The notes under the pieces are model-generated. The model was not told the origin of the DNA. It did no database searches and saw nothing but the letters and a program-made list of their open reading frames with translations. DNA of 56,589 nt, taken from assembly GCF_001194135.2 (NCBI RefSeq), contig NC_069008.1, forward strand, positions 7,206,461 to 7,263,049, in the 5' to 3' direction. This stretch comes from Octopus bimaculoides. Its lineage: Eukaryota. This document shows positions 2,928 to 48,982 of this stretch, piece after piece. Made by a program: the position numbers and the translations under genes. Position 1 is the stretch's first letter. Every line of letters begins with the position of its first letter.

Positions 2928-3530
2928 AACATTTTGACACTAGGCCAATAATTTGGAGGGAGAGGGTAAGTCGATTACATCGACCCCAATGTTCAACTGA
3001 TACTTATTTCGTTGACCCCCCCCCCCACGAAAGGATAAAAGGCAAAGTCGACCTCAGCGGAATTTGAACATGAAGACAAATGAAATACCGGTACGCGTTT
3101 TGCTCGACGTGCTAATGATTCTTTTCTACTCAAGGCACAAGGCATTTTGGGGGAAGGGGCCAGTCGATAAAATCGACCCCAGTACGCAACTTGTACTTAA
3201 TTTATCAATCACGAAAGGATGAAAGGCAAAGTCGATCCTTGGCGGAATTTGAACTCAGAGCATAAAGACAGACGAAATAGCGCTAAGCATTTCGCCCGGC
3301 TTGCTAACGTTTCTTATTTCTTTATTGCCCACAAGGGGCTAAACATAGAGGGGACAAACAAGGACAGACAAAGGGATTAAGCCGAATACATCGACCCCGG
3401 CGTGCTAACGTTTCTTATTTCTTTATTGCCCACAAGGGGCTAAACATAGAGGGGACAAACAAGGACAGACAAAGGGATGAAGCCGAATACATCGACCCCG
3501 GCGTGCTAATGTTTCTGCCAGCTCGCCTCC
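2928..3530 (-). mobile_element. Two tandem SINE B copies; the second is interrupted in its head by a 101-bp duplicated insertion
   Basis: ATCGACCCC..AAGGAT.AAAGGCAAAGTCGA core occurs twice. The head ends GCCAGCTCGCCTCC at about 3530. Confidence 0.85.
3296..3516 (-). repeat. 101-bp tandem unit x2: SINE-B core end plus Tx1-like 3' tail, bounded by three copies of a 19-bp target
   Basis: CCGGC(G/T)TGCTAA(C/T)GTTTCT at 3296-3314, 3397-3415 and 3498-3516. The 82-bp inserts at 3315-3396 and 3416-3497 differ at one base. Confidence 0.9.
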
Positions 3531-4074: not shown

Positions 4075-4609
4075 NNNNNNNNNNNNNNNNNNNNNNNNNN
4101 NNNNNNNNNNNNNNNNNNNNNNNNNNNNNNNNNNNNNNNNNNNNNNNNNNNNNNNNNNNNNNNNNNNNNNNNNNNNNNNNNNNNNNNNNNNNNNNNNNNN
4201 NNNNNNNNNNNNNNNNNNNNNNNNNNNNNNNNNNNNNNNNNNNNNNNNNNNNNNNNNNNNNNNNNNNNNNNNNNNNNNNNNNNNNNNNNNNNNNNNNNNN
4301 NNNNNNNNNNNNNNNNNNNNNNNNNNNNNNNNNNNNNNNNNNNNNNNNNNNNNNNNNNNNNNNNNNNNNNNNNNNNNNNNNNNNNNNNNNNNNNNNNNNN
4401 NNNNNNNNNNNNNNNNNNNNNNNNNNNNNNNNNNNNNNNNNNNNNNNNNNNNNNNNNNNNNNNNNNNNNNNNNNNNNNNNNNNNNNNNNNNNNNNNNNNN
4501 NNNNNNNNNNNNNNNNNNNNNNNNNNNNNNNNNNNNNNNNNNNNNNNNNNNNNNNNNNNNNNNNNNNNNNNNNNNNNNACCCGCTTCTCTTCATGATTAA
4601 TATTTTCAA

Positions 4610-6942: not shown

Positions 6943-7266
6943 AAAAATTATTTCTCTCCCAGGAAATTATACCACCTCGGCGTTGAAGTAGGAAGAAAGG
7001 TGTGATGTAAGAGGTGAAGATCCTTTCGGTATTCTGTATAGTACTATACAGAATACCGAAAGGATCTTCACCTCTTACATCACACCTTTCTTCCTACTTC
7101 AACGCCGAGGTGGTATAATTTCCTGGAAGAGAAATAATTTTTGCGGCTGAGGATAGCTTTGCATTGTAAATTATACACATATTATATTATACACATGTAA
7201 AGCTTGANNNNNNNNNNCTACTTCAACGCCGAGGTGGTATAATTTTCTGGGAGAGAAATAATTTTT

Positions 7267-7345
7267 GCGGCTGAGGATAGCTTTGCATTGTAAATTATAC
7301 ACATATTATATTATACACATGTAAAGCTTGAAACACGTGTACCGC
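7267..7345 (+). ncRNA. Type I hammerhead ribozyme motif, intact
   Basis: Same motif as 6864-6942, on the opposite strand. CTGAGGA at 7271-7277, GAAAC at 7330-7334, predicted cleavage after A7341. Confidence 0.85.
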
Positions 7346-7544: not shown

Positions 7545-7712
7545 TATAGCGCAGGAATGGCCGTGTGGTAGGTAGTTTGCTTACCAGTCACATGGTTCTG
7601 AGTTCAGTCCCACTGCGTGGCACCTTGGGCAAGTGTCTTCTACAATAGCCTCGGGTCGACCAAAGCCTTGTGAGTGGATTTGGTACATGGAAACTGAAAG
7701 AAGCCTGTCGTA
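7545..7712 (+). mobile_element. SINE family A, 5' part, followed by (TG)n
   Basis: TGGCCGTGTGG A-box-like and GGTTCTGAGTTCAGTCCC B-box-like motifs. Body matches the other A copies. Confidence 0.88.
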
Positions 7713-8459
7713 TGCGTGTGTGTGTGTGTGTGTGTGTGNNNNNNNNNNNNNNNNNNNNNNNNNNNNNNNNNNNNNNNNNNNNNNNNNNNNNNNNNNNNNN
7801 NNNNNNNNNNNNNNNNNNNNNNNNNNNNNNNNNNNNNNNNNNNNNNNNNNNNNNNNNNNNNNNNNNNNNNNNNNNNNNNNNNNNNNNNNNNNNNNNNNNN
7901 NNNNNNNNNNNNNNNNNNNNNNNNNNNNNNNNNNNNNNNNNNNNNNNNNNNNNNNNNNNNNNNNNNNNNNNNNNNNNNNNNNNNNNNNNNNNNNNNNNNN
8001 NNNNNNNNNNNNNNNNNNNNNNNNNNNNNNNNNNNNNNNNNNNNNNNNNNNNNNNNNNNNNNNNNNNNNNNNNNNNNNNNNNNNNNNNNNNNNNNNNNNN
8101 NNNNNNNNNNNNNNNNNNNNNNNNNNNNNNNNNNNNNNNNNNNNNNNNNNNNNNNNNNNNNNNNNNNNNNNNNNNNNNNNNNNNNNNNNNNNNNNNNNNN
8201 NNNNNNNNNNNNNNNNNNNNNNNNNNNNNNNNNNNNNNNNNNNNNNNNNNNNNNNNNNNNNNNNNNNNNNNNNNNNNNNNNNNNNNNNNNNNNNNNNNNN
8301 NNNNNNNNNNNNNNNNNNNNNNNNNNNNNNNNNNNNNNNNNNNNNNNNNNNNNNNNNNNNNNNNNNNNNNNNNNNNNNNNNNNNNNNNNNNNNNNNNNNN
8401 NNNNNNNNNNTGTGTGTGTGTGTGTGTGTGTGTGTGTATACGTGCAGAGGTATGTGTGA

Positions 8460-8830
8460 GAGCAACATGGCTGAGAAGTTTAGTTTGTTTTGCAACCATT
8501 TCCATCCTATTTGGGCAAATATTTTTCGTTCACAAAAAGCAGGCGAACAGACCTCTCGAGGCCAGTCAGATGTCAAATGGGAAAATGTGGTAAGATAGAG
8601 ATGATGTCAGAGTTCGCCACTTCTAGCCGACCTTTCATGTATAGTTTTCTCGTGAAACTGTCTCGGTTCTTGTGCACCTTAGATCTAGATCAAACGAGAT
8701 CCGAGCTATTGAACTGGTTCATCCGTCCAGCGACCCACAACGTTGTAGGACATGGGCCTGTCACTCCAAGGGCCGAACGGGAGGTCCGCCGGCTTTACCT
8801 GGTTATTCTTGGGGTGGAGCTTGGTATGTA
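8460..8830 (-). mobile_element. Degenerate L1/Tx1-like ORF2 fragment (post-RT region)
   Basis: Minus-strand remnants PMSYNVVGRWTDEPV and RKLYMKGRLEVANSDII resemble the segment that follows the RT core in L1/Tx1 ORF2 (LSLKGR-type motif). Confidence 0.5.
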
Positions 8831-9826: not shown

Positions 9827-11111
9827 NNNNNNNNNNNNNNNNNNNNNNNNNNNNNNNNNNNNNNNNNNNNNNNNNNNNNNNNNNNNNNNNNNNNNNNNNN
9901 NNNNNNNNNNNNNNNNNNNNNNNNNNNNNNNNNNNNNNNNNNNNNNNNNNNNNNNNNNNNNNNNNNNNNNNNNNNNNNNNNNNNNNNNNNNNNNNNNNNN
10001 NNNNNNNNNNNNNNNNNNNNNNNNNNNNNNNNNNNNNNNNNNNNNNNNNNNNNNNNNNNNNNNNNNNNNNNNNNNNNNNNNNNNNNNNNNNNNNNNNNNN
10101 NNNNNNNNNNNNNNNNNNNNNNNNNNNNNNNNNNNNNNNNNNNNNNNNNNNNNNNNNNNNNNNNNNNNNNNNNNNNNNNNNNNNNNNNNTATATATATAT
10201 ATATATATATATAGATATATATATATATACATACATACATACATATATATATATATACATATATATATATATGTATATATATATACATACATACATTCAC
10301 ACATGGGGGATCGTGATTACTAGAGATTGCTAGCGCGGCGTGAAGTCTGTGGCCGCTTGAAGACGTCTCATTTGCATTTACAAACATATTTACACACGTG
10401 TTGTCCTGTGCTAAGCATTTGACAGGATATCCACCATATGAACATTTTAATTATGGGTCTACTCGGTTACTATTGGTCTTACATGAACAAAAGCAACTGC
10501 AACAACAGTGTAAAAATCATTGTTCAGATAAATTGTCTTGGTTCCTTACATAATCTATAACACAATAAATTCGTCAAACACTTCACTACTCTTCGCACAC
10601 GCATGCATACACACACGTACGCACACGCGCGCGCTCACACATCCTGAAAATCAAAATCAGATAAAGGACACATATGTTAATATAGCTCTACACACACCTA
10701 ACAATGCAAGATGGTCACGGCTTGAGCAATTTTGATGACACGTCGACTAGATTGTAGCTGACCTGGCACAAAACAACATCGCCGACAGTAATAATATAAC
10801 ATTCATTGTGATCGAACACACAAATTCTGTGTAGACATATATCTAAGACACAGCTGTTTCTGTAATCATATATTTAAGACAAAATTATTCATTGAGTCAT
10901 ATATATATAATCACAATAAGTCATGTAATCATACATCTAAGTCACAACAGGTCCTAGAATCATATATTTAAACATCAAAGTCATAATTGTTCATATAATC
11001 ATATGTGATATCGAACTACTCTGACGTCGTATGTGTATAATCTCGTAATCTCAGATTGTACATTAAATATATATATAGAAAGAAAGATACACACACACAC
11101 ATATATATATT

Positions 11112-11196
<85 letters not shown>

Positions 11197-11233
11197 GTAG
11201 GTAGGTAGGTAGGTAGGTAGGTAGGTAGGTAGG

Positions 11234-11296
<63 letters not shown>
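11112..11296. repeat. Compound (GATA)n(GGTA)n(GATA)n microsatellite
   Basis: Direct inspection. Confidence 0.97.
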
Positions 11297-11297
<1 letters not shown>

Positions 11298-12224
11298 CAG
11301 AAAAGTGAATTGGTAGATGAATATATAAACATACAAAAACTCACGTTTAAGCAAAAATAGCTCACACAATCTCACACACTCATGAGCATATAAAACATTC
11401 AGACCAACACACAAACACACACACACACACACACACACAATATACAGACCAAATCACACACATACACACAGAACATAAACATAGACATAGACGCAATAAC
11501 TCATACATACTAATCTATGCACACACACATATATACAATAAGAGGAACCACCACCATTTCCATCATCGCTATTACTACCACAACATTACCAAAACTACCA
11601 CCTGAACGGACACTGGTACTTCAACAGTAACTTGCCGCCACTATCATCACCACCACGACCACCACTATCACACTTGCACGCTGTCACGTCACAATAACCA
11701 CCACCAACACACTACCTCCACTATTATCATTATCAACATCATCATCTTGATAGAATATTTAGTGTATAAGTCTGTTTGTGTGTGAGTGTGTGTGTATTCC
11801 TATATTTTCTGCCTCAAATAATACAAGGATATAACATAGTAGTTAAACGGAGAAGACAAAGAGAAAGAGAGGAGAAAGAGGGGATGAGAAAGTGAAAAAG
11901 AAGGAAAATTGATATCTATGTGTATGAGAGAAAGGGGGAGAGAGAGTGTGGGAGTGAGAGAGAAAGAAGGAGAGAAGGATTTGAATGTCAAGTGTAGTTG
12001 ACCATAAAAGAAAATCGACACGCCTCCAGTTTTTTAAGCCACATACACATACACACACACACACATTACACGCATACATATATACACATACATACAAACA
12101 TTTATATACTCATACATCGATGTTCCAGTGTGGCTTTGGTAGTGACGGCTTAGACAAGTTAAAGACGTAAAGAACACGCACTTACAAATACACATTCATA
12201 TATATATATATATAACAGAGAGTG

Positions 12225-12258
<34 letters not shown>

Positions 12259-12841
12259 GAATTGGTGATGAGAAAGGAAGAGATTGAACAAAGTGCTTAC
12301 TGAGTGGAACTGAATCAAGTGAAGTGAATTTGAGTGTAATGGATTGAGTGTTATGCATATATCCCGAGCGATAACGATAAGGAACTAATTGATACAGCAA
12401 TTGACATTTTGCAAGTGTGCGCAATATTGGAAACTACTTCTAAGCTGTCAGTCATAAATTCTGTTTCCTACACACCAAAAAAAACAAAAAAACAAAAACA
12501 AAAGCCCACACCCGCATAGCATACGCAGTTTTTGTTTTTTCTTAATACTGTCAACACACATAACACGCCATTGCAATAAAGGTTGAGGATCGATACGTTG
12601 GGATCTATAATACACAAAGTGATTCGAGGAGCATATACATTCGCACCACATGCGCACGCGCTCACACACGCACGCACATGCTCACACAAACACACACACA
12701 CACACAAACACACTCATACACCACACTCACGAGGAAATAAATATATGAGTATAAGAGCAGACAAGTAAACGTTGCGTGTGATCTGAAGTTTTATATATAT
12801 ATACACACATCCATCCATACATACAAACATACATACATATA

Positions 12842-12872
<31 letters not shown>

Positions 12873-13039
12873 CTTATATACTTTTATATATCTACATATT
12901 ACAATATCATATACGCATACACACATAACAGGCGTACACAGATACGTACATACGTATGTATGTATATATATATACACACATGCTTACATTAATATATATG
13001 TATATAAAAAAGTGAAATATAACATCAAAACGCCTCACG

Positions 13040-14017
13040 ATGTGGGCTAACAGCACAGACGACCCGGAGAACTTTACCAAACCGAATTGGATTCATATGA
13101 CAATAATGATTGCCGTGACGGTTCTAATCTTGTTGTCATCTCTTTTCACTCTGGCCGTCATCGTTTACTCGAACGGTTACAGGTCATTACAGGGCATATT
13201 CATGATCTGTATAGCTTCGTCTAATTTATTAGTCGGCGTTTTGGTCACACCTGTCGGCATATTTCTCTCGCAAAACCCGGACTATCAAACGATCGAGAAC
13301 ATCTGTCCCGTGTCCTGCACCTCGCTCCTGTGGTCTGTCACTTTCGTTCTCTACTGCATCGGCTTCATGGCCCTGGAAAAGTACTTCAAAATCAAGTTAT
13401 CTATTACCTACGTTAACCGGATTCGACCACTCTACGGTTGGATTGTAGCTTGTCTGACAGCCGTCGGCAGTGCCTTCGTCGTCGCCCTCCCGATAAAGCT
13501 TCAAGGTTCCGAGATGTTCCGTTTGTACTCTGACACCAGTTTTCTGTGCATCTTCAGCTACCAAGGTTTGGGCTATATTTCCACACCAGCCATCCTACTT
13601 AATATCGGTTCGCATTTGGCGCTCGGCCAACTTGTGCGTCATATCAAGCGCAACCCCAATCAAATGTGTCCATCGATGCCTCGCCGACTCAACCGCGACC
13701 TGACGGCAGCGAAAACCATTTCCATTTCACTCGGGATCTTTCTCTGCTCCTATATTCCTGCTACAGTCTGTATCTTCTTACGACAATACGTTGTCGTGGA
13801 CATACCAAAACCAGTCTTTTTCGGAGTCACTTGGTTGACGATCTCAAACAATTTCTTTATTTCCATCCTCTACTACCAACACAACAGTGTGTTCCGGTAC
13901 AAGGCCCAGAAACTGATTCAAGTTATGTGTAATCCTTGCCAGTCATTGTTCTGCAGCAAGACGAACATTAAGGGCCTCTGGACATTTACTGATGTCAATG
14001 ACCAACTAAGTTTATAA
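13040..14017 (+). CDS. Single-exon class A (rhodopsin-like) orphan GPCR, 325 aa
   Basis: Uninterrupted ORF with seven hydrophobic segments. N-terminal sequons NST and NFT. TM3 Cys and ECL2 Cys (FLCIF). LEKY in place of DRY, TM6 AAKT..GIFLCSYIP, TM7/helix 8 WL...NN..ISILY...N..FR. In-frame TGA at 13013-13015, A at -3 of the ATG, and GC content higher than the flanks. Confidence 0.93.
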   Translation: MWANSTDDPENFTKPNWIHMTIMIAVTVLILLSSLFTLAVIVYSNGYRSLQGIFMICIASSNLLVGVLVTPVGIFLSQNPDYQTIENICPVSCTSLLWSVTFVLYCIGFMALEKYFKIKLSITYVNRIRPLYGWIVACLTAVGSAFVVALPIKLQGSEMFRLYSDTSFLCIFSYQGLGYISTPAILLNIGSHLALGQLVRHIKRNPNQMCPSMPRRLNRDLTAAKTISISLGIFLCSYIPATVCIFLRQYVVVDIPKPVFFGVTWLTISNNFFISILYYQHNSVFRYKAQKLIQVMCNPCQSLFCSKTNIKGLWTFTDVNDQLSL

Positions 14018-14638
14018 CCATTAGGTATTTATTTATTATAATTATTATAACAATTTTCATTGAATACGCCAAATATCTACCCATCTACCACCCCAAATTC
14101 ATTCTCCTAGGTTGAGTTGATAAGATATATAACACTGATGGAGTTCACTTCCACCAACTATGTGCCTGTGTCCTTTAGACATCTTTGATTAAATGAAATT
14201 TAAAATCATTATAATGATTTTTGTGTCATTGAATACAATATCTATCATTACATTGGTTAAAAATTAACCTGTCCTTCTTCCAGAGTCGGATTCGATAAAA
14301 TAATCAGTATATCAGTCAGTTTTTAGAGAGAAAAGCGTTCATCTTAATCAAAATATGCGCCATTGCATAGAGATTTTTATATTTTTTTATGTTTGACATT
14401 GTCAAGCGAACTTCTACACAACCACCAGGGGCATCCTCCTTTTCCTGAGGTGTGCATGTGTGCGCGTGCGCGCAGTTAAGTCCTTTAATAAGTATTTTAA
14501 ATAATCTTCCAGTTCTACAGTCGTTACTATTTGCACCAAAGCTTATCTTCACTGAGTACATGTACGAAGAGGGAGGTGCATCCTTTTTAAATCTTCAAAA
14601 ACTTCCTAGAGTGCTAACGACTCTGCCAGCTCACAGCC

Positions 14639-25598: not shown

Positions 25599-26090
25599 AG
25601 AAAAAATAAAGTAATCTATTATNNNNNNNNNNNNNNNNNNNNNNNNNNNNNNNNNNNNNNNNNNNNNNNNNNNNNNNNNNNNNNNNNNNNNNNNNNNNNN
25701 NNNNNNNNNNNNNNNNNNNNNNNNNNNNNNNNNNNNNNNNNNNNNNNNNNNNNNNNNNNNNNNNNNNNNNNNNNNNNNNNNNNNNNNNNNNNNNNNNNNN
25801 NNNNNNNNNNNNNNNNNNNNNNNNNNNNNNNNNNNNNNNNNNNNNNNNNNNNNNNNNNNNNNNNNNNNNNNNNNNNNNNNNNNNNNNNNNNNNNNNNNNN
25901 NNNNNNNNNNNNNNNNNNNNNNNNNNNNNNNNNNNNNNNNNNNNNNNNNNNNNNNNNNNNNNNNNNNNNNNNNNNNNNNNNNNNNNNNNNNNNNNNNNNN
26001 NNNNNNNNNNNNNNNNNNNNNNNNNNNNNNNNNNNNNNNNNNNNNNNNNNNNNNNNNNNNNNNNNNNNNNNNNATATATATATATACACA

Positions 26091-26255
26091 CGACAGGCTT
26101 CTTTCAGTTCCCGTCTACCAAATCCACTCACAAGGCTTTGGTTGGCGCGTGGCTATAGCAGAAGACACTTGCCAAGGTGCCGCACAGTGGGACTGAACCC
26201 GGAACCATGTGGTTGAGAAACAAGCTTCTTACCACACAGTCACACCTGCACCTAT
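26091..26255 (-). mobile_element. SINE family A, 5' part, running into (TA)n
   Basis: Matches the other A copies. Confidence 0.88.
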
Positions 26256-29103: not shown

Positions 29104-29382
29104 GTGAATATTCACGTTCACTGTATATGTATCCATTTCGTATCAGCAAACACCCAGTCTATCATTCATGTCGGCATTGTATCTATGTATCTAGTCACTA
29201 TCTACACACTGTTTATTTACTCAGTTCAAATATACAGCCCCTCTGTGTGTGTGTGTATGTATGTGTGTGTGTGTGTGTGTGTGTGTGCATGTGTGTGCGC
29301 GCGCGCGTGTATGTGTAATACAGAAATGTATACATAAGCTGTATAACTGCAATGGGTATGTAAACAGTAGTGTGTAAACATT

Positions 29383-30187
29383 ATGTATGTATGTATGTAT
29401 GCATGTATGTATGTATGTATGAATGGATGGATGTATGCATGTATGTATGTATGTATGTATGCATGTATGTATGTATGTAGGGATGTATGTATGTATGTGT
29501 GTGTGTATGTATGTATGTATGTATGCATGCATGCATGTATGTATGTATGTATGTGTGTATGTATGCATGTATGTATGTATGCATGTATGTATGTATGTAT
29601 GTATGTATGTATGTAGGGATGTATGTATGTATGTATGTGTGTATGTATGTATGTATGTATGCATGTATGTATGTATGCATGTATATATGTATGCATGTAT
29701 GTATGTATGTATGTATGTATGTGTGTGTGTATGTATGTATGTATGTATGTATGNNNNNNNNNNNNNNNNNNNNNNNNNNNNNNNNNNNNNNNNNNNNNNN
29801 NNNNNNNNNNNNNNNNNNNNNNNNNNNNNNNNNNNNNNNNNNNNNNNNNNNNNNNNNNNNNNNNNNNNNNNNNNNNNNNNNNNNNNNNNNNNNNNNNNNN
29901 NNNNNNNNNNNNNNNNNNNNNNNNNNNNNNNNNNNNNNNNNNNNNNNNNNNNNNNNNNNNNNNNNNNNNNNNNNNNNNNNNNNNNNNNNNNNNNNNNNNN
30001 NNNNNNNNGTATACATGTATGTATGTATGTATGCATGTATGTATGTATGTATGTATGTATGTATGTATGTATGCATGTATGTATGCATGTATATATGTAT
30101 GCATATATGTATGTATGTATATATGTATGTATGTATTATGTATGTATACATGTATGTATGCATGTATGCATGTATGTATGTACGTAA
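29383..30187. repeat. (TATG)n/(TG)n compound microsatellite with internal gap
   Basis: Direct inspection. It is the source of the YVCM/HTYI pseudo-ORFs. Confidence 0.97.
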
Positions 30188-30489
30188 ATGCTTCAATGTA
30201 TATAGTTGCCATTATTACAATTTATCAGTCCCAATTAAAGCCTTTCGCTCCCATTTAGTAATCAATAACGATTTCTATATCTATAATCAACAAGATAAAA
30301 ACTGTGGCCGGGTCGCAAAGGGAATATCATGTGACACTAAGTATTTACATATTAAATTACAATTTTATACGGCAGGGGTGAAGAGGAGCGGGAGTGGAAC
30401 GGGAGTGCGAGAGAGCGTGAAGGAAGGCATGCGAGAGATCGGAGATATCGAGATTAAAAGGGACTATATATATATATATATATGTATAC

Positions 30490-30521
<32 letters not shown>

Positions 30522-31357
30522 NNNNNNNNNNNNNNNNNNNNNNNNNNNNNNNNNNNNNNNNNNNNNNNNNNNNNNNNNNNNNNNNNNNNNNNNNNNNNNN
30601 NNNNNNNNNNNNNNNNNNNNNNNNNNNNNNNNNNNNNNNNNNNNNNNNNNNNNNNNNNNNNNNNNNNNNNNNNNNNNNNNNNNNNNNNNNNNNNNNNNNN
30701 NNNNNNNNNNNNNNNNNNNNNNNNNNNNNNNNNNNNNNNNNNNNNNNNNNNNNNNNNNNNNNNNNNNNNNNNNNNNNNNNNNNNNNNNNNNNNNNNNNNN
30801 NNNNNNNNNNNNNNNNNNNNNNNNNNNNNNNNNNNNNNNNNNNNNNNNNNNNNNNNNNNNNNNNNNNNNNNNNNNNNNNNNNNNNNNNNNNNNNNNNNNN
30901 NNNNNNNNNNNNNNNNNNNNNNNNNNNNNNNNNNNNNNNNNNNNNNNNNNNNNNNNNNNNNNNNNNNNNNNNNNNNNNNNNNNNNNNNNNNNNNNNNNNN
31001 NNNNNNNNNNNNNNNNNNNNNNNNNNNNNNNNNNNNNNNNNNNNNNNNNNNNNNNNNNNNNNNNNNNNNNNNNNNNNNNNNNNNNNNNNNNNNNNNNNNN
31101 NNNNNNNNNNNNNNNNNNNNNNNNNNNNNNNNNNNNNNNNNNNNNNNNNNNNNNNNNNNNNNNNNNNNNNNNNNNNNNNNNNNNNNNNNNNNNNNNNNNN
31201 NNNNNNNNNNNNNNNNNNNNNNNNNNNNNNNNNNNNNNNNNNNNNNNNNNNNNNNNNNNNNNNNNNNNNNNNNNNTACATATACATGTGTATTTATATAT
31301 CTACTTACACCTATATGCATGTCTATATTTATATCTATCTACATATATATATATTTA

Positions 31358-31427
<70 letters not shown>

Positions 31428-31869
31428 TATGTTTTTATTACACATATTTAGCATATTCACACAAAGCCGTTTGTTAACGAGCATATATATATATATATAC
31501 ATATATATATGTATATATAATTGTTAATAAGATAATAAATTACCATATATTAACATGTTAATGAAATTTCTTTCTTGAAAGAAATATGCATATTGAATGA
31601 AGAATTTCTTTTTGACTCACCATATCTCCGTCTCGTCCTCGATTACACAGGCACACACATCCACACGCGCGCGCGCATACATACAAATAAATTTGCAATT
31701 CGTGTAAAATGTGTACTTATAAACAGGCGCACATTTACATAGAAAGAAACCTACTTTCTAGAGTGTACTTAAGAATATAAGTATAGATTTTTATACATCT
31801 TTAGATATATTCTGTATTTTATTATCGCATTGAAACAAGCATCCTAAACGCATCAGTAATACATACGTA

Positions 31870-32286
31870 CGTGCGTGCGTGCATGCATAAATACATACAT
31901 ACACACACACACATACATACATACATATATACATACATACGTACATACATACACACATATACACACACGTACACACATATACATACATATATACACACAT
32001 ACATGCATATATACATACATAGTACATACATACACACACATACACACAAACCTACGCACACATATACACACATATACATATATATGTGCATACATACACA
32101 CACATACATACATACACACACATACACACACATATACATACATACATGCATGCATGCATGCATACATACATACATACATACATACACACATACATACATA
32201 CATACATACACACATACATACACACACATACATACATACATACACACACATACATACATATACATACATACATGCATGCATGCATG

Positions 32287-32318
<32 letters not shown>

Positions 32319-32330
32319 CATACATACATA
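31870..32330. repeat. (CATA)n/(CA)n compound microsatellite
   Basis: Direct inspection. Confidence 0.97.
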
Positions 32331-33353: not shown

Positions 33354-33569
33354 TTTAAATAAAGAATGTTGTTCATGCAATTTTCTGTCGTTTATTTATT
33401 TTTATTTATTTATTTATTTATTTATTTAAACGCTGCGAATAATATGAAATTTCTGATGTATTTCCAGTAGCAGTAACATTTTCATTGTATGATGGTTTCA
33501 GGTCGCCAATAAATTAGGACGAGCTTTGCATAGCTTTTTACATAGTGTTTGCCTGAATCTTAAGTAGAC

Positions 33570-33631
<62 letters not shown>

Positions 33632-33660
33632 GTAGATAACAGACAGACAGACAGATAGAC

Positions 33661-33706
<46 letters not shown>

Positions 33707-33710
33707 TGAG

Positions 33711-33757
<47 letters not shown>

Positions 33758-40494: not shown

Positions 40495-40516
40495 TGTATG
40501 TATGTATGTATGTATG

Positions 40517-40651
40517 TGTTTGTGTGGTCTGTGTTTGTGCTCCCACCCCGCCTGCCATCGCTTGACAACAGATGTTGGTGTGTTTATGTCCTTGTTAACT
40601 CAACGGTCGGCAAAAGAGACCGATAGCATAAGTACTAGGCTTACAAAGAAT
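40517..40651 (+). mobile_element. SINE family A, 3' part (truncated), preceded by (TATG)n
   Basis: CCATCGCTTGACAACAGATGTTGGTGTGTTTATGTCC. Confidence 0.85.
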
Positions 40652-40879: not shown

Positions 40880-43800
40880 ACGTAAGTCTAGCTCACTAAT
40901 CTATCTGTAGTGTCACTGAAGGAATTCAACGCAGTTGCGATCACATTAACCAGAATTAAAATCACAAGGGTCCCACCGGAAGTGGATCCTATGTGGTTGG
41001 TGGCGACAGTCCTAATCGAACAGGAAGAGAAAATTACCCTCTTCCAGGCTGCCGCTACCGAAAATGCTAACTGGACTGGCCAAACAGTTAGTCTCCTCAT
41101 CCAGGCTGACCCTAAAATAGTTGAAGCAATTCCCGAGATGATTGAGATAGGGGAGGAGACCCTCGTGGTGTTTGTTGAGGGCCGAAAACCCCGATGTTTT
41201 TTGTGCGGCCTATTAGGCCACATTCGAAGAAACTGCAAGGAAAATGAGGAAGAGGAGGAAGAGGAGAAAGAAGAAAAGAGAAGGAAGAAGAAAAAGATGA
41301 GAAGAAAACAACAAATAAAAGAAATACAATCAGCAACTCAACCGAGAGCGGCGACTACTACAGAACAACGACCAAACAAGACTGCAAGAAGAGAAAAAGA
41401 GGAGAAAGGCATAATAGCCGTATACAGTAAAGNNNNNNNNNNNNNNNNNNNNNNNNNNNNNNNNNNNNNNNNNNNNNNNNNNNNNNNNNNNNNNNNNNNN
41501 NNNNNNNNNNNNNNNNNNNNNNNNNNNNNNNNNNNNNNNNNNNNNNNNNNNNNNNNNNNNNNNNNNNNNNNNNNNNNNNNNNNNNNNNNNNNNNNNNNNN
41601 NNNNNNNNNNNNNNNNNNNNNNNNNNNNNNNNNNNNNNNNNNNNNNNNNNNNNNNNNNNNNNNNNNNNNNNNNNNNNNNNNNNNNNNNNNNNNNNNNNNN
41701 NNNNNNNNNNNNNNNNNNNNNNNNNNNNNNNNNNNNNNNNNNNNNNNNNNNNNNNNNNNNNNNNNNNNNNNNNNNNNNNNNNNNNNNNNNNNNNNNNNNN
41801 NNNNNNNNNNNNNNNNNNNNNNNNNNNNNNNNNNNNNNNNNNNNNNNNNNNNNNNNNNNNNNNNNNNNNNNNNNNNNNNNNNNNNNNNNNNNNNNNNNNN
41901 NNNNNNNNNNNNNNNNNNNNNNNNNNNNNNNNNNNNNNNNNNNNNNNNNNNNNNNNNNNNNNNNNNNNNNNNNNNNNNNNNNNNNNNNNNNNATAAACCG
42001 GGTAACCGAGAAAAAGTTGTTTTTTTCTGATCCAGAAGGCAGGCTGGTCGTTCTTGACCTGACATTCAGTTGTGGCAAGATAATCAGGCTCGTTGCTATT
42101 TATGCACCCAATATTATGGGCCCGCAAAGTGAATATTTTCGTGACCTGGGCAAGTTCCTGGCCACGTCGCATTCGTTAGTATTGTTAGGAGACTTTAACA
42201 CAATATGTGACGCACACACAGATTGCGTTGGCTCGAACATGAACAGAAAATGTAACCCAGGCTTACGGGATCTGCTAAGTCACTTTCAGCTAGCAGATCC
42301 ATATAGGTTGGAACACTCCACAGTGGACGTGGTCAAATAGAGACGGCTCTTCCAGAACATATCTAGATATGATCTTAATTAGAGAAACAGATAAGTCCAT
42401 AGCTAAGTGTCCACAGTTTTTTCTAGTCAACTACAGTGACCACAAGATGGTTACCTGTAAACTGACAATAGATAAGTTACATAGTCAGGGATCTAGCTAC
42501 TGGAAACTCAATACGTCCCTTTTGGCGATCGAGGAATATAGAAAGCGGATCAAGATATTAATACAGAGGGCATTGGCATGTACCATCATTAATAACAAAT
42601 GGTGGTACGCCCTAAAAAGAGCCATCAAATATGAGTCTACTAGGTTTAGTATGAGTTTAGCTAAGAAGGGACGTAGAATAGGAGATGGTTTAGTTAAGGA
42701 ACTAGAAGAAGCCTGGAGGACTGGTAATGCGGACCAAGCGAAGGTGAGAAGACTGGAGTTAAACCAGCATCTTGAAGCCCAACACATGGGAAGTATTGCC
42801 AGAGCTAAGTTACGTGCGATGGGAAGTGACGGAATCAAGGCCGCTGGATGGGCCCGAGTGGTGGAAGCTCGGCAAGGAAATAGTTCCACTATACGGTCTT
42901 TGACGAATCATAATGGGGTCTTGGTAAATGAACCCGAGAAAATGTGTGAGGCCTTTCGAAAGTACTTCACCCAGCTGTTCGGGGTTGATGGCGGTCCTGG
43001 TGGTGGGAGAGCCCTCGAGGACTTTCTTGCCGGTCTGCTGTGTCTCTCGGGGTCGGATGCGGAGTCTTGCGAAGCGCCAATCACGCCTGGGGAAGTGATG
43101 GAGGCTTTGGCCGACTGTAAAGCGGGTAGGTCGCCGGGACTTGATGGTCTTCCGTACGAGCTGTATAAATGTATGCCAGACTTGTTCGGGCATCTACTGG
43201 CTGACGTTTACGCGAACTGGCAACAGACTTGGTTTATCCCCAGATCTGTACGCCGAGGAGTAGTGGCATTGGTCAGAAAGGACCCGGACAAGGAGGACGT
43301 TATAAAGAATTTCTGCCCATCACTCTGTTAAATGCAGAAGTGAAGATTTTGACCAAGGTCTTAGCGAAAACGTTGGCGCGTGTCGCGAATGGTATAGTCG
43401 AGGAGGCACAGACATGTGCCATCCCAGGCAGAACCATTCAGGATACCCTCCATCTTATCTGCTATACCATAGAGAGGATTGGTAATAAATCTGACAAAGG
43501 TGGGACACTGGTACATTTGGACTAGTCTAAGGCTTTTGATAGGGTTGACGATACCTGGCGACTGTGCTTGCGCGGTTTGGCGTGGGCCTTGGCTTCTTCA
43601 GGTGGTTTATCGCTTTGTAACATTGACTCGATAGTTCCGGTGAACGGTTTCCTTTCGAAGCCGTTCTGCATCAGACGCTCGGTTCGTCAAGGATGTCCGC
43701 TCTCACCGCTTTTGTATGTGGTGGCTCTGGACCCCCTACTGCGAAGGTTGAGTGGCATTCCGAGAGAACCAGGTCGAGAGGAGTTTGTTACGGCTTACGC

Positions 43801-45245
43801 GGATGATATCACTATCAGCGTAACCTCAGTAGCACGCCTACGTGAAGTGGGTAAGACTGTTGAGGCTTACGAGGAGGTGGCAGGAGCAAAGATTAACNNN
43901 NNNNNNNNNNNNNNNNNNNNNNNNNNNNNNNNNNNNNNNNNNNNNNNNNNNNNNNNNNNNNNNNNNNNNNNNNNNNNNNNNNNNNNNNNNNNNNNNNNNN
44001 NNNNNNNNNNNNNNNNNNNNNNNNNNNNNNNNNNNNNNNNNNNNNNNNNNNNNNNNNNNNNNNNNNNNNNNNNNNNNNNNNNNNNNNNNNNNNNNNNNNN
44101 NNNNNNNNNNNNNNNNNNNNNNNNNNNNNNNNNNNNNNNNNNNNNNNNNNNNNNNNNNNNNNNNNNNNNNNNNNNNNNNNNNNNNNNNNNNNNNNNNNNN
44201 NNNNNNNNNNNNNNNNNNNNNNNNNNNNNNNNNNNNNNNNNNNNNNNNNNNNNNNNNNNNNNNNNNNNNNNNNNNNNNNNNNNNNNNNNNNNNNNNNNNN
44301 NNNNNNNNNNNNNNNNNNNNNNNNNNNNNNNNNNNNNNNNNNNNNNNNNNNNNNNNNNNNNNNNNNNNNNNNNNNNNNNNNNNNNNNNNNNNNNNNNNNN
44401 NNNNNNNNNNNNNNNNNNNNNNNNNNNNNNNNNNNNNNNNNNNNNNNNNNNNNNNNNNNNNNNNNNNNNNNNNNNNNNNNNNNNNNNNNNNNNNNNNNNN
44501 NNNNNNNNNNNNNNNNNNNNNNNNNNNNNNNNNNNNNNNNNNNNNNNNNNNNNNNNNNNNNNNNNNNNNNNNNNNNNNNNNNNNNNNNNNNNNNNNNNNN
44601 NNNNNNNNNNNNNNNNNNNNNNGGGAGACAGGGAAACCGTCCCTCACGCTATTGTTCAGTGTCCGGAGATATCTGAAATGTGGGCTTATGCTGAGCACCT
44701 GTTGTCCGGCGAAGGAAGAATACAGCTGTCGACTGAGTCAATTATAAAAATTGACCCACCGGGAGTTTTAACAAACGACGGTAAGAATTGTTTTCTCACG
44801 GCTGTAGCATTAGCGAAAGAGGCAGTATAGAAGACGAGGACAAAAGGAATTAAGACAGGCAACTTTATCTCTGGCCACGATTTACGATTATCTTTTACTT
44901 TTCATTTGAAAAGGTGTGGCTGGAGAAGAGATGTTTGTCGGAGTGTACATTCCAAAAGAGATGGAAGCATGCTGCACGAGTGTTGTGCGTGCAAGGAGCC
45001 GTGTGAATAGACGGGGAAAAAAGAACAAACAAAGGTACCAGCGATAGATCGGGGCTTGTGGGGTCGGAGCGTGGCCTGATCATCGCTTCATTTGTATTGT
45101 CTCTGTATTGTTAATTTCATTCGATTTTTTAAATATTTTATTTAATTTTTAAAGTCACATTTTATGTAAAACCATATCGCATTACTGATCCCAATCAATT
45201 GTTCTGTCCATTTCTGTGTTTAGCCCTTGGTGGGCAATAAAGAAA
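40880..45245 (+). mobile_element. L1/Tx1-clade LINE, near full length, disrupted, with two N gaps
   Basis: ORF1 zinc knuckle CFLCGLLGHIRRNC. APE motifs VAIYAPN, LLGDFN and SDHKMV. RT motifs SPGLDGLPYELY, SKAFDRV, RQGCPLSPLLY and AYADDI. C-terminal ETVPHAIVQCP. 3' end GCAATAAAGAAAT. Confidence 0.93.
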
Positions 45246-46029: not shown

Positions 46030-46795
46030 GTACGAAGCCCAATAGACTCATCGTGACTATTCATCTGATAAGAGTACACCAGGCACATGCATCACAACCA
46101 TATGTGCGCGACATGGTGATCTCATATCAAGATAAACAGAGCATGACCTCGCAGGTAGGGCCCAGTTAGAATTTTCTTCAGGTCGGGTAGCCCATCCTGC
46201 TCAAAAGGTCCCTGAATAAGGTTCGCTTAAGGATGTTGAGCAAAACACCCATGTTTCCAAAGATGAATTATTCAAACCCCAAAGAATTCCTCTCAACACA
46301 TGGCTATGATGCTCCCCCACTACTTCTGCTCGTGATCAGAGATGCACATATCATCAGCCACCAAGGGACATGCTCAACTGGTTAAGGTCAAACAACTGAC
46401 AAGCAAATCTGTGGTATTAAGCAGAATATTTGCTGTANNNNNNNNNNGCCCATCCTGCTCAAAAGGTCCCTGAATAAGGTTCGCTTAAGGATGTTGAGCA
46501 AAACACCCATGTTTCCAAAGATGAATTATTCAAACCCCAAAGAATTCCTCTCAACACATGGCTATGATGCTCCCCCACTACTTCTGCTCGTGATCAGAGA
46601 TGCACATATCATCAGCCACCAAGGGACATGCTCAACTGGTTAAGGTCAAACAACTGACAAGCAAATCTGTGGTATTAAGCAGAATATTTGCTGTAGCCCA
46701 TCTTTTACACCAAGACAAAACAATGTACATGATAACACTTCCAATCAATTAAGATCAGAAGTCATGAGAGCCACTGCCTGGTACTGCATCCGGGC
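46030..46795 (-). mobile_element. Interspersed repeat family E (includes an assembly overlap at the 10-N gap)
   Basis: Shares sequence with 14701-14860 and 49490-49625. Abuts (ATT)n at 46796 onward. Confidence 0.75.
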
Positions 46796-46897: not shown

Positions 46898-47722
46898 CTC
46901 CTTCGTAACACAGTGTAGGTAAAAATGCACTGGAGTCTTAAGTCATTTGTCAAGTCACAACAAGGACCTCAGACAGATAATACTTTCCTTAAGATGTGCA
47001 CTGTGCCCAATAAGGCTGCTTTTTGCAAGACATCAATCTTCCATGGGATTTCCAGTTGCCTTAAGAAAGCTCCGATCACCACTGATATCACTTTTACATT
47101 ACCCTCTCACATTCGTTAGTCTTGCCATTTCCACTTCCAGTTCAGAGTACTTGGTGATTTTTTTCAACCTCTTTACTCACAACATCAATGATCAGACAGT
47201 ATTTCTATCTCTTACTCAATATGACAATATCCGGCCGATGGTATTCGATTACACGATCCGACTGAAAATCATAGTCCCAGAGTATCATTACTTTTCCATC
47301 CCCCTGCATATCTTTTCTGGGTACATGTTCATACCAGTTCTCTGTTACTTCATATTGGTATTTATGGCATAAGAGCCAATGAAGATACACACACACTTTA
47401 TCGTAGCAGCGCTTGTATTTTTTTTTTGCAAGGCTCTCACATCCACTTACCAAGTGGGTCACAGTTTCCACACTCTTTCCACGGAGTGTACATTTCTGGG
47501 TGTCAGAAGTTTTATAGATGTTATACTTCACTGAATTAGTAGCGAGAGCCTGGTCTTGTGCAGCAATGATCAGGCTTTTAGTGGTATGCTTCAAATCACC
47601 TCACTCATGCCCATGATGATGTATTATCCTTAACGTCTTGTGTATTCCTTTCAAACTGTCCATGCATTCGCATTTCAAGGTCTTTTCTCTTCTCCTCAGT
47701 TCTTTGGTTAAACTATTGCTGT
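46898..47722 (-). mobile_element. R4/Dong-like 3' fragment (zinc finger plus RLE plus 3' UTR) between trinucleotide tracts
   Basis: MHGQF, LIIAAQDQAL, ETVTHLVSGC, ILWDYDFQSDRVIEYHRPDIVI and LQKAALLGTVHILRKVLSV*. Confidence 0.9.
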
Positions 47723-47741
47723 AATAATAATAATAATAATA

Positions 47742-47794
<53 letters not shown>

Positions 47795-47814
47795 GATTAT
47801 TATTATTATTATTA

Positions 47815-47870
<56 letters not shown>

Positions 47871-48658: not shown

Positions 48659-48737
48659 TATGTTTTTGGTAATTTCTCGTGGGGAGGCTTTGGTCTTGTG
48701 CAACAATTAAAAATCCTTCAGTCTCTGCTTTGAGTCC

Positions 48738-48740
<3 letters not shown>
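48659..48740 (-). mobile_element. R4/Dong-like fragment starting directly at (AAT)n and running into a gap
   Basis: GLKAETEGFLIVAQDQSLPTRNYQKH. Confidence 0.8.
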
Positions 48741-48806
<66 letters not shown>

Positions 48807-48982
48807 CATTATTATTATTATTATTCAGATATCAGAAGCTCAGAAAATATAGCACGAAATGGATAAGCGAAATCGATGAAACAATCGGAAAAAAATTAAA
48901 GAAATGATGCAAGACAAAGCCGCACATATTGAGTAGAAAAGGTCAGACTTCTGCAAGGATAACAATATTGCTTTCTGATCCT

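What the first reader, a model, noticed from the sequence alone, without database searches (positions are those of the whole stretch)
13040..14017. Intact GPCR ORF that has lost most class A signature residues
Seen (Ballesteros-Weinstein positions assigned by eye): N1.50 to S, D2.50 to N (IASSN), DRY to EKY, ICL2 Pro to S, W4.50 apparently absent, Y5.58 to S/H, CWxP to SYIP, NPxxY to ISILY. Retained are C3.25 and the ECL2 Cys, P5.50, F6.44, P6.50, N7.45, Y7.53, helix 8 FR, two N-glycosylation sequons and C-tail cysteines. There is no Asp3.32 (not a canonical amine receptor) and no Lys7.43 (not an opsin). Established: D2.50 and N7.49 form the Na+ pocket, and DRY/NPxxY are activation switches; chemosensory and atypical receptors often diverge there. 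Inference: a lineage-specific sensory, atypical or constitutively biased receptor, isolated in a transposon desert.
Basis: partly seen in the sequence, partly recalled or inferred. Interest (0 to 1): 0.7.

Follow-up and report, generated by a model that had tools for sequence, protein, structure and literature searches.

The report
Cephalopod orphan receptor with rewired core
This is an intact, evolutionarily conserved single-exon gene for a cephalopod-restricted orphan class A G-protein-coupled receptor whose usual activation residues have nearly all been replaced and then kept unchanged by selection, so it is a working but unconventional receptor, not a dying gene.

Summary
Window 13040-14017 (+) is one intact 325-codon ORF. 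It passes Pfam 7tm_1 only narrowly (38.2 bits, cutoff 30.5) and models confidently as a 7TM plus helix-8 receptor (pLDDT 88.9). Its nearest solved structures are beta1-adrenergic, melatonin, serotonin and adenosine receptors.

Two independent alignments confirm S1.50, N2.50, E-K-Y, S34.50, A4.50, S-Y-I-P and I-S-I-L-Y. That is 7 of 10 hallmark positions lost, against 0-3 in the 54 nearest class A relatives.

It is not a pseudogene. Intact orthologues at 87, 78, 64 and 63% identity carry the same substitutions. dN/dS is 0.19 and 0.07. The cytoplasmic halves of the helices are 74% invariant.

The family is tiny: these cephalopod sequences plus one 29%-identical metagenome protein, then a gap to generic class A. 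It appears single-copy. Public records call it 'GPR52-like', but GPR52 is not its closest relative.

Best reading: a lineage-restricted orphan receptor with a remodelled sodium-pocket and microswitch core. It probably signals atypically through a family-specific cytoplasmic surface and a conserved C-terminal tail. That mechanism is inferred, not shown. A sensory role has no support. No expression data could be obtained.

The parts
13040..14017 (+). Complete single-exon CDS (325 aa plus TAA) of the orphan class A receptor
   Evidence: ORF listing. Pfam 7tm_1 38.2 bits, E 1.5e-9. Orthologues 63-87% identical over the full length. dN/dS 0.19 and 0.07.
13049..13078 (+). Extracellular N-terminus with two N-glycosylation sequons (N4-S-T, N11-F-T)
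   Evidence: Sequon scan. All five orthologues have a sequon at or near position 4. The rest of the N-terminus is poorly conserved (3/16 invariant).
13088..13168 (+). TM1 (aa 17-43), with S33-S34 at 1.49-1.50 in place of G-N
   Evidence: AF2 helix 17-43. S34 aligns with N1.50 of beta1-AR. N at this position in 52/54 relatives; S in all family members including P0010.
13187..13273 (+). TM2 (aa 50-78), with N62 at 2.50 (nt 13223-13225), C57 at 2.45 and I58 at 2.46
   Evidence: N62 aligns with D2.50. D in 54/54 relatives, N in all five orthologues.
13283..13396 (+). TM3 (aa 82-119): C89 (3.25), L96 (3.32), V103 (3.39), E113-K114-Y115 (nt 13376-13384) replacing D/E-R-Y, K117 (3.53)
   Evidence: R3.50 in 51/54 relatives. 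K in all five orthologues and in P0010.
13427..13519 (+). TM4 (aa 130-160), with A141 at 4.50 and P151 at 4.60; the invariant W134 lies 7 residues upstream of 4.50
   Evidence: W4.50 in 51/54 relatives. P0010 retains W4.50.
13520..13558 (+). ECL2 (aa 161-173): short predicted beta-hairpin carrying C170, the disulfide partner of C89
   Evidence: AF2 strands 162-164 and 169-171. C170 invariant and aligned with the ECL2 Cys in 50/54 relatives.
13559..13651 (+). TM5 (aa 174-204), with invariant P183 (probable 5.50) and no Tyr at 5.58
   Evidence: The register is ambiguous by 3 residues (see observation check).
13667..13792 (+). End of ICL3 and TM6 (aa 210-251): invariant C-P-S-M-P-R-R-L-N-R-D (210-220; D220 = 6.30), S230 (6.40), F234 (6.44), S-Y-I-P (nt 13748-13759)
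   Evidence: Invariant columns. BW table. W6.48 in 50/54 relatives; Y in the whole family.
13808..13882 (+). TM7 (aa 257-281): N270-N271 (7.45-7.46), I-S-I-L-Y (nt 13859-13873) replacing N-P-x-x-Y, Y279 (7.54)
   Evidence: N7.49 in 52/54 relatives. P0010 keeps N7.49 (N-T-V-F-Y).
13886..13930 (+). Helix 8 (aa 283-297), with F285-R286 and C297 as a possible palmitoylation site
   Evidence: AF2 helix 283-297. N282-S-V-F-R286 invariant.
13931..14014 (+). Disordered C-tail (aa 298-325) with two conserved short motifs: L313-W-T315 and V319-N-[DE]-[QH]-L-S-L-COOH (a hydrophobic-x-hydrophobic terminus)
   Evidence: pLDDT below 65 here, yet these residues are invariant in five orthologues. The PDZ-ligand reading is inference.
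12877..13039 (+). Conserved 5' flank (possible 5' UTR or promoter-proximal sequence)
   Evidence: Colinear with the 87%-orthologue contig L003, 84% identity against 78.5% at third codon positions. Function not shown.
14018..14326 (+). Conserved 3' flank (possible 3' UTR), with a conserved ATTAAA at 14188-14193
   Evidence: 86% identity to L003. The polyadenylation role is inferred only.

Best explanation
The ORF encodes a functional, single-copy orphan receptor of the rhodopsin-like (class A, amine/melatonin/adenosine-like) fold, found so far only in cephalopods.

In the ancestor of this small family, the polar core that normally relays agonist binding to the G-protein site was rebuilt. This core comprises the Na+ pocket (N1.50, D2.50, S3.39, N7.49), the toggle W6.48, the hydrophobic lock at 6.40 and R3.50 of D-R-Y. 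It became S1.50, N2.50, V3.39, I7.49, Y6.48, S6.40 and K3.50, with new invariant residues at 3.53 (K), 7.46 (N) and 7.54 (Y). Purifying selection has since kept this state unchanged.

Shown here: the gene is intact, conserved and constrained; the fold is 7TM plus helix 8 with the TM3-ECL2 disulfide pair; the cytoplasmic side is the most conserved part.

Inferred: the receptor cannot bind allosteric Na+ and cannot run the canonical NPxxY/DRY relay. It therefore most likely works as an atypical receptor. It may be biased towards one conformation (the polar 6.40 loosens the TM3-TM6 lock, and a K3.50-D6.30 pair is possible). It would engage its intracellular partner through the family-specific surface K3.50/K3.53/D6.30/A6.33-A6.34/I6.37/S6.40/Y7.53-Y7.54 and through a conserved hydrophobic-x-hydrophobic C-terminal tail that looks like a PDZ-type scaffold ligand.

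The binding pocket is uncharged (L3.32, A6.51, T6.52, I7.43), so any ligand is not a classical amine or retinal.
For: - Intact ORF and Pfam 7tm_1 hit.
- AF2 model pLDDT 88.9, pTM 0.87, seven helices plus H8. Foldseek top hits are beta1-AR, MT2, 5-HT1D and A2A, with TM-scores 0.72-0.80.
- Profile search of PDB sequences ranks aminergic receptors first, at 78 bits.
- Orthologues at 87/78/64/63% identity all have intact ORFs of 325-327 aa and identical motif states.
- dN/dS is 0.19 (dS 0.36) and 0.073 (dS 1.06), with Fisher p of 9e-17 and 8e-53. dS is saturated in deeper pairs while dN stays at 0.15-0.31.
- Cytoplasmic TM halves are 74% invariant against 41% for extracellular halves.
- P0010 is only 29% identical overall, yet shares S1.50, I2.46, K3.50, K3.53, D6.30, A6.33, A6.34, I6.37, S6.40, S6.47, Y6.48, N7.46, Y7.53, Y7.54 and Q7.55. 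The remodelled cytoplasmic surface is therefore a family signature.
- Published mutagenesis in A2AR shows that D2.50A, N7.49A and N7.45R abolish agonist potency, while 6.40 and 3.43 substitutions give constitutive activity (PMC6954041).
- ACKR2 naturally carries D-K-Y-L-E-I-V and does not signal through G proteins (PMC9168005).
Against: - No functional, expression or ligand data exist for this gene in anything I could search.
- K3.50 keeps a positive charge. Y7.53, F6.44, P6.50, D6.30 and helix-8 F-R are retained, and the conserved positions 3.53, 3.54, 6.33 and 6.37 are also G-protein contact sites. Ordinary G-protein coupling through a compensated network is therefore not excluded.
- The AF2 model resembles inactive-state structures slightly more than active ones. 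This does not favour constitutive activity, although AF2 conformational state is not reliable evidence.
- The PDZ reading of the tail rests on three residues only.
- The Logan contigs look genomic, so they give no evidence of transcription.
Confidence: 0.6

Rival explanations
1. It is a conventionally G-protein-coupled orphan receptor. In this view K3.50 substitutes for R3.50, and the co-evolved polar residues (N2.50, N7.45, N7.46, S6.40, Y6.48, Y7.54) rebuild a working relay. The receptor might have high basal Gs-type activity, like the GPR52/GPR21/GPR61/GPR101 group of orphans to which automatic annotation assigns it.
For: - Retained Y7.53, F6.44, P6.50, D6.30, F-R of helix 8 and the C3.25-ECL2 Cys pair.
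- G-protein contact positions 3.53, 3.54, 6.33, 6.34 and 6.37 are invariant even in the 29%-identical P0010.
- The nearest structures are all G-protein-coupled aminergic, melatonin or adenosine receptors.
- TM7-H8 gives a local match to GPR52 and GPR21.
- Related bilaterian orphans form a clade inside the monoamine-type receptors (bioRxiv 10.1101/2025.04.18.649542).
Against: - R3.50, D2.50, N7.49, N1.50 and W6.48 are all missing together. Single substitutions at D2.50 or N7.49 abolish agonist potency in A2AR.
- GPR52 and GPR21 are not among the 60 best profile hits and match only aa 232-303 by single-sequence search.
- The natural K3.50 precedent, ACKR2, does not couple to G proteins.
Confidence: 0.3
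2. It is a chemosensory (sucker, skin or olfactory) receptor.
For: - Chemosensory GPCR families often lose class A motifs (general knowledge).
- The extracellular half is the least conserved part, at 27-41% invariant.
- It is lineage-restricted.
Against: - There is a single cluster per species, no paralogues in the window, and no close paralogue in the 15-billion-protein collection.
- Strong purifying selection, omega 0.07-0.19.
- Pocket-lining residues L3.32, A6.51, T6.52 and I7.43 are invariant across deep divergence. This points to one fixed ligand or none, not a diversifying repertoire.
- No expression data.
Confidence: 0.07
3. It is a recently inactivated or neutrally drifting pseudogene whose ORF is open by luck.
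For: It has lost 7 of 10 hallmark residues, scores close to the Pfam cutoff, and sits alone among transposon debris.
Against: - Intact full-length ORFs occur in at least five divergent species, with synonymous sites saturated between the deeper pairs.
- dN/dS is 0.07-0.19, with p below 1e-16.
- The unusual residues themselves are invariant.
- The start and stop positions are conserved.
Confidence: 0.01

Closest known systems
Aminergic-type class A receptors (beta1-adrenergic, 5-HT1, D2, TAAR13) and their neighbours (melatonin MT2, adenosine A2A)
   Same: They are the best sequence-profile and fold matches: beta1-AR at 78 bits and TM-score 0.72-0.80. Shared features are 7TM plus helix 8, the C3.25-ECL2 disulfide pair, F6.44, P6.50, Y7.53, helix-8 F-R and an acidic 6.30.
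   Different: Only about 20% identical. It lacks the amine-binding D3.32 (L96), the aromatic 6.51/6.52 pair (A, T), N1.50, D2.50, S3.39, R3.50, W4.50, W6.48 and N7.49-P7.50. The model predicts ECL2 as a short hairpin.
GPR52/GPR21 (the name given by automatic annotation to the Octopus sinensis and Argonauta hians orthologues)
   Same: Local similarity over TM6-TM7-helix 8 (aa 232-303; 24.5 and 20.6 bits). Many of the nearest relatives, like this protein, lack Pro at 7.50. Both are orphans and have an intron-less coding region.
   Different: They are not the closest family: absent from the top 60 profile hits, while beta1-AR aligns full-length at higher score. The sequences labelled GPR52 or GPR52-like among the relatives (P0019, P0014 cluster) keep N1.50, D2.50, D-R-Y, W6.48 and N7.49. 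The label is a best-hit artefact, not orthology.
Atypical chemokine receptor ACKR2 (D6)
   Same: It is a natural Arg-to-Lys change in the D-R-Y box (D-K-Y-L-E-I-V against E-K-Y-F-K-I-K) in a receptor maintained by selection that does not activate G proteins (PMC9168005). This is a 'works like' analogy only.
   Different: There is no specific sequence relationship. Chemokine receptors are not among the top hits. ACKR2 belongs to a different class A branch and binds protein ligands. The octopus protein has lost many more core positions.
Metagenome protein P0010 (ENA ERZ23499624 scaffold_23364, 324 aa; source organism unknown)
   Same: It is the only other family member found (E 1.3e-33, 29% identity, full length). 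It shares S1.50, loss of D2.50, K3.50, K3.53, S6.40, S-Y-x-P, N7.46 and Y7.53-Y7.54, and also has a single-exon ORF.
   Different: It keeps W4.50, P34.50 and N7.49 and has D-K-T instead of E-K-Y. It therefore shows an intermediate state, with a different C-terminus.

Membership tests
Class A (rhodopsin-like) GPCR, Pfam PF00001 7tm_1 | Scores above the curated Pfam gathering threshold | tested here: met
   38.2 bits against a cutoff of 30.5, aa 36-271. The margin is narrow, and the 87% orthologue P0002 has no precomputed Pfam hit.
Class A (rhodopsin-like) GPCR, Pfam PF00001 7tm_1 | Seven-helix bundle plus amphipathic helix 8, superimposable on solved class A receptors | tested here: met
   AF2 pLDDT 88.9, pTM 0.87. 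Foldseek gives beta1-AR at E 1.7e-9 and TM 0.72/0.78. It is a prediction, not a solved structure.
Class A (rhodopsin-like) GPCR, Pfam PF00001 7tm_1 | Conserved Cys3.25-ECL2 Cys pair | tested here: met
   C89 and C170 are invariant and correctly aligned.
Class A (rhodopsin-like) GPCR, Pfam PF00001 7tm_1 | Hallmark residues N1.50, D2.50, R3.50 (D/E-R-Y), W4.50, W6.48 (C-W-x-P), N7.49-P7.50 (N-P-x-x-Y) | tested here: not met
   The residues are S34, N62, K114, A141, Y238 and I274-S275. P6.50, Y7.53 and E3.49 are kept. It is a member by fold and profile but a deviant in the microswitch signature.
GPR52/GPR21 orphan receptors | Closest relatives by sequence (reciprocal best family) | tested here: not met
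   GPR52 (6li2) scores 24.5 bits over aa 232-302 only, and GPR21 20.6 bits. Both are outranked by about 30 aminergic entries and absent from the top 60 profile hits.
GPR52/GPR21 orphan receptors | ECL2 acting as built-in agonist with high constitutive Gs activity | not testable with these tools
   Needs a signalling assay or an experimental structure. I could not inspect the model coordinates.
Biogenic amine receptors | Asp3.32 counter-ion for the amine | tested here: not met
   L96 at 3.32, invariant in all five orthologues; I in P0010.
Opsins | Retinal-binding Lys7.43 | tested here: not met
   I268 at 7.43. No opsin appears among the top sequence or fold hits.
Atypical (non-G-protein) receptors such as ACKR2 | Altered D-R-Y box together with absence of G-protein signalling | tested here: inconclusive
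   The altered box is present (E-K-Y), and ACKR2 has D-K-Y. The functional half of the definition cannot be tested here, and there is no sequence kinship to ACKRs.
Lineage-expanded chemosensory GPCR families | Many paralogues, often in tandem arrays, with relaxed or diversifying selection | tested here: not met
   One cluster per species and no paralogue in the 56.6-kb window or the protein collections. Omega is 0.07-0.19.

The most novel reading that the evidence does not exclude
This is the founding member of a small, previously undescribed class A subfamily (coleoid cephalopods plus one unknown metazoan). The entire Na+-pocket/DRY/NPxxY relay has been replaced by a different, co-evolved network (S1.50-N2.50-V3.39-S6.40-Y6.48-N7.46-I7.49-Y7.54 with K3.50/K3.53). 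The receptor would couple to a transducer in a structurally new way: a naturally evolved alternative activation mechanism within the class A fold.
Probability: 0.2. Interest if true: 0.75.

Novelty: new variant of a known kind. Interest (0 to 1): 0.42.

Why it matters
Class A receptors are thought to share one activation pathway running through a handful of near-universal residues. A receptor that has replaced seven of these and then kept the new state under strong selection, across divergences deep enough to saturate synonymous sites, is a natural experiment. It can show which parts of that pathway are truly indispensable. It could also reveal either a compensated G-protein relay or a non-G-protein mode of action outside vertebrates.

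It adds a conserved, single-copy, cephalopod-restricted signalling gene to the list of lineage-specific novelties. It also corrects a misleading automatic name ('GPR52-like').

The practical value is modest until expression and signalling are measured. Divergent orphan GPCRs are common in invertebrate genomes.

Tried and rejected
1. AF2 on the five orthologues alone gave an unusable model (pLDDT 42). Adding 54 distant class A representatives fixed this.
2. I tried to identify the species and library type behind the Logan and ENA orthologue contigs (SRR11869385/91, SRR82816xx, ERZ21867824, ERZ23499624) through full-text searches. Nothing relevant turned up. The 327-aa orthologues are therefore only inferred to be from more distant cephalopods (probably decapodiforms), and P0010's source is unknown.
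3. I tried to use the Logan contigs as expression evidence. They end in microsatellites. One of them (L003) is colinear with the window's genomic flanks and carries a dispersed repeat. They look genomic, so this was rejected as evidence.
4. Literature searches by accession and by 'octopus + GPR52' found no paper on this gene. General cephalopod GPCR searches were uninformative.
5. The opsin-without-lysine idea (gluopsin-like; PMC9368030) was rejected, because no opsin is among the sequence or fold neighbours.
6. Neighbouring ORFs in the orthologous loci L001 and L002 were examined for synteny or species clues. Only low-complexity or repeat ORFs were found.
7. tRNA and Rfam scans of the window were empty.
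8. Most long ORFs elsewhere in the window turned out to be artefacts of N gaps.
9. The third homologous-protein search was left unused, because the exhaustive representative search had already bounded the family.
Full report
**What is there**

Window 13040-14017 (+) is a single uninterrupted ORF of 325 codons. It has no assembly gaps. An in-frame stop lies 24 nt upstream of the ATG, and there is an A at -3. Its GC content is 0.46 (GC3 0.59), against 0.33-0.35 in the 2-kb flanks and 0.32 for the window. At this composition an open frame of this length has a chance of about 2e-7 per start. The other long ORFs in the window are artefacts of N gaps, simple repeats or transposon remnants.

**Family and fold**

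Pfam gives only 7tm_1, at 38.2 bits against a cutoff of 30.5. The protein is a class A receptor but close to the edge of the family.

Single-sequence and profile searches of PDB sequences rank beta1-adrenergic, 5-HT1, D2, TAAR13, melatonin, H2 and A2A receptors first.

An AlphaFold2 model built on five orthologues failed (pLDDT 42). With 54 distant class A representatives added, it reached pLDDT 88.9 and pTM 0.87. It shows seven helices, a short ECL2 hairpin and helix 8. Foldseek against the PDB returns turkey beta1-AR, MT2, 5-HT1D and A2A, with TM-scores of 0.72-0.80.

**The observation**

I assigned Ballesteros-Weinstein positions from the phmmer alignments to beta1-AR and independently from the 60-sequence alignment.

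- S34 (1.50) and N62 (2.50)
- L96 (3.32)
- E113-K114-Y115 (3.49-3.51)
- S121 (34.50)
- A141 (4.50)
- S237-Y238-I-P240 (6.47-6.50)
- I268 (7.43)
- I274-S275-I-L-Y278 (7.49-7.53)

The retained features are also correct: C89, C170, F234, P240, N270, Y278, F285-R286, two N-terminal sequons and three tail cysteines.

One caveat applies. P183 is invariant and is probably P5.50, but the HMM alignment shifts TM5 by three residues. In either register there is no Tyr at 5.58.

Seven of ten hallmark positions are lost. The 54 nearest class A representatives have lost 0 (34 sequences), 1 (15), 2 (2) or 3 (3).

**Is it a live gene?**

A search of 5.8 billion protein clusters found five clusters:
- the window's own protein, whose 90% cluster also holds Octopus sinensis XP_029657882, annotated 'G-protein coupled receptor 52-like'
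- an 87% orthologue from Logan assemblies
- a 78% orthologue from Argonauta hians (GAB1607157)
- two 327-aa proteins at 64 and 63% identity, from unidentified samples

All have intact ORFs with the same start and the same C-terminus. All carry the same unusual residues.

I took the DNA of each and computed Nei-Gojobori dN/dS. It is 0.19 for window against the 87% species (dS 0.36) and 0.073 between the two 327-aa forms (dS 1.06). All deeper pairs have saturated dS with dN of only 0.15-0.31. Fisher tests give p of 9e-17 and 8e-53. The pseudogene reading is refuted.

Conservation is highest on the cytoplasmic side:

| Region | Invariant |
|---|---|
| Cytoplasmic TM halves | 74% |
| Extracellular TM halves | 41% |
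| Intracellular loops + H8 | 56% |
| Extracellular loops + N-terminus | 27% |

The remodelled region is exactly the part under the strongest constraint.

**How big is the family?**

An exhaustive HMMER scan of 1.84 billion representatives with the orthologue profile found one further relative. This is P0010 (E 1.3e-33, 29% identity, 324 aa), on a 1.3-kb metagenome scaffold of unknown origin. After it, scores drop to 1e-12 for generic class A receptors from brachiopods, nematodes and amphioxus, which carry mutually inconsistent automatic names. A second word-indexed search with P0010 added found nothing new.

The family is therefore tiny and apparently single-copy.

P0010 is an informative intermediate. 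It has S1.50, no acidic 2.50, D-K-T, S-Y-L-P, S6.40, N7.46 and Y7.53-Y7.54, but still has W4.50, P34.50 and N7.49. At 29% overall identity it shares almost every residue at 3.46-3.54, 6.30-6.41 and 7.53-7.55. The altered cytoplasmic surface is therefore the family's signature.

**Is it GPR52-like?**

GPR52 and GPR21 match only TM6-H8 (aa 232-303), at 20-25 bits. They are outranked by full-length aminergic matches and are absent from the top 60 profile hits. The sequences labelled GPR52 or GPR52-like among the distant relatives keep the canonical motifs.

The name is a best-hit label. At most the protein belongs near the loose group of monoamine-type orphans (GPR21/52/61/101/161) described in bioRxiv 10.1101/2025.04.18.649542.

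**How it probably works**

Established background comes from Zhou et al. 2019 (PMC6954041):
- Agonist binding is relayed through 6.48/6.44/3.40 and the Na+ pocket (2.50, 3.39, 7.45, 7.49).
- The relay continues through the hydrophobic lock (3.43, 6.40, 6.41) to Y7.53 and R3.50.
- In A2AR, D2.50A, N7.45R and N7.49A abolish agonist potency, while substitutions at 3.43 and 6.40 cause constitutive activity.

Here 2.50, 3.39 and 7.49 are N, V and I, so a Na+ site cannot exist. Position 6.40 is a polar Ser. Position 6.48 is Tyr. Position 3.50 is Lys, with an acidic 6.30 retained.

My inference is that the canonical relay is not used. The receptor is either held in a biased conformation or uses a co-evolved substitute network. 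The strongly conserved cytoplasmic surface shows that it still binds something inside the cell.

ACKR2 is a natural precedent for Lys at 3.50 in a selected, non-G-protein receptor (D-K-Y-L-E-I-V; PMC9168005).

The disordered C-tail carries two invariant short motifs, L-W-T and V-N-[DE]-[QH]-L-S-L-COOH. The terminal hydrophobic-x-hydrophobic pattern fits a class II PDZ ligand. That assignment rests on my own knowledge of PDZ motif classes and is an inference.

The pocket residues L3.32, A6.51, T6.52 and I7.43 are invariant and uncharged. This argues against amines and retinal, and against a diversifying chemosensory role.

My confidence levels are:
- functional, constrained, lineage-restricted orphan receptor with a remodelled core: about 0.9
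- specifically atypical (non-canonical) signalling: about 0.45
- conventional G-protein coupling through compensation (the main rival): about 0.3

**Context**

Within 56.6 kb this is the only recognisable cellular gene. The rest of the window contains:
- 21 N gaps (6,644 N)
- long tetranucleotide microsatellites and a few tandem duplications
- a reverse-transcriptase fragment at 43568-43900, with a weak zinc knuckle upstream of it
- a Mos1/mariner-type HTH fragment at 51446-51946 on the minus strand

There are no tRNAs or Rfam families.

The flanks 12877-13039 and 14018-14326 are colinear with the 87% species. They are 84-86% identical, more than third codon positions (78.5%). A conserved ATTAAA lies 171 nt past the stop. 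This fits UTRs but does not prove transcription.

**Limits**

I could obtain no expression, ligand or signalling data. The species behind three of the orthologue clusters and behind P0010 are unknown. I could not inspect the model coordinates, so the K3.50-D6.30 and polar-network contacts are untested.

**Verdict**

The gene model already exists in public annotation under a misleading name. The conserved wholesale remodelling of the activation core has not, as far as I could find, been described.

I rate it a new variant of a known kind, of moderate interest.

Noticed in passing
window 4075-4578, 7739-8410, 9827-10189, 25623-26073, 30522-31275, 41433-41992, 43898-44622, 47871-48657 and 13 smaller runs: The window holds 21 runs of N (6,644 bases, 11.7%), so it comes from a gapped scaffold. 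The gaps translate without stops and create many spurious long ORFs in several frames on both strands (e.g. 7581-8598, 29487-31451, 47601-48809).
   Followed up: yes
window 43568-43900 (+), with 40910-41432 and 42294-43328 upstream: A reverse-transcriptase fragment (RVT_1, E 8e-12) runs into an N gap. Upstream are a weak zinc-knuckle hit (below the Pfam cutoff) and a 345-aa open frame with no Pfam hit. It is probably a retrotransposon remnant. This is the most GC-rich part of the window (0.46).
   Followed up: partly
window 51446-51946 (-): An ORF fragment carries the HTH domain of Mos1/mariner transposases (HTH_48, E 1e-6). It is a DNA-transposon remnant.
   Followed up: partly
window 11101-11301, 29382-29753, 30015-30186, 31882-32330, 33565-33757, 47742-47870; also 12780-13010 just upstream of the gene: Long tetranucleotide microsatellites are present (ATAG x50, TATG x93, CATA x117, TAGA x49), along with an ATT x43 run. 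An AT/AC-rich simple-sequence tract abuts the receptor's start codon.
   Followed up: no
window 3295-3516, 7094-7331, 46187-46702: There are three near-perfect short tandem duplications: 101 bp x2.2 at 97%, 124 bp x2 at 98%, and 258 bp x2 at 92%. Their origin is unknown.
   Followed up: no
L001 6835-7415 (Argonauta hians locus) vs window 26180-26240, 7563-7620, 55319-55378: A roughly 52-bp tandem array downstream of the Argonauta orthologue matches short dispersed copies in the window at 77-83% identity. This suggests a repeat family shared across octopods.
   Followed up: no
L003 1638-1773 vs window 40511-40648 (-): Beyond the colinear block, the 87%-orthologue contig ends in a sequence that matches a dispersed repeat 26 kb away in the window. 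An insertion or deletion therefore differs between the two species about 310 bp downstream of the stop codon.
   Followed up: no
L008 152-1126 (metagenome scaffold ERZ23499624 scaffold_23364): This is the only distant family member (P0010), an intact single-exon ORF on an AT-rich, eukaryote-like 1.3-kb contig inside a metagenome assembly. Its motif state is intermediate (keeps W4.50 and N7.49). The source organism is unknown.
   Followed up: partly
window 13976-14014 (aa 313-325): The disordered C-tail ends in two invariant short motifs, L-W-T and V-N-[DE]-[QH]-L-S-L-COOH. These are conserved across all five orthologues although the rest of the tail is poorly conserved.
   Followed up: partly
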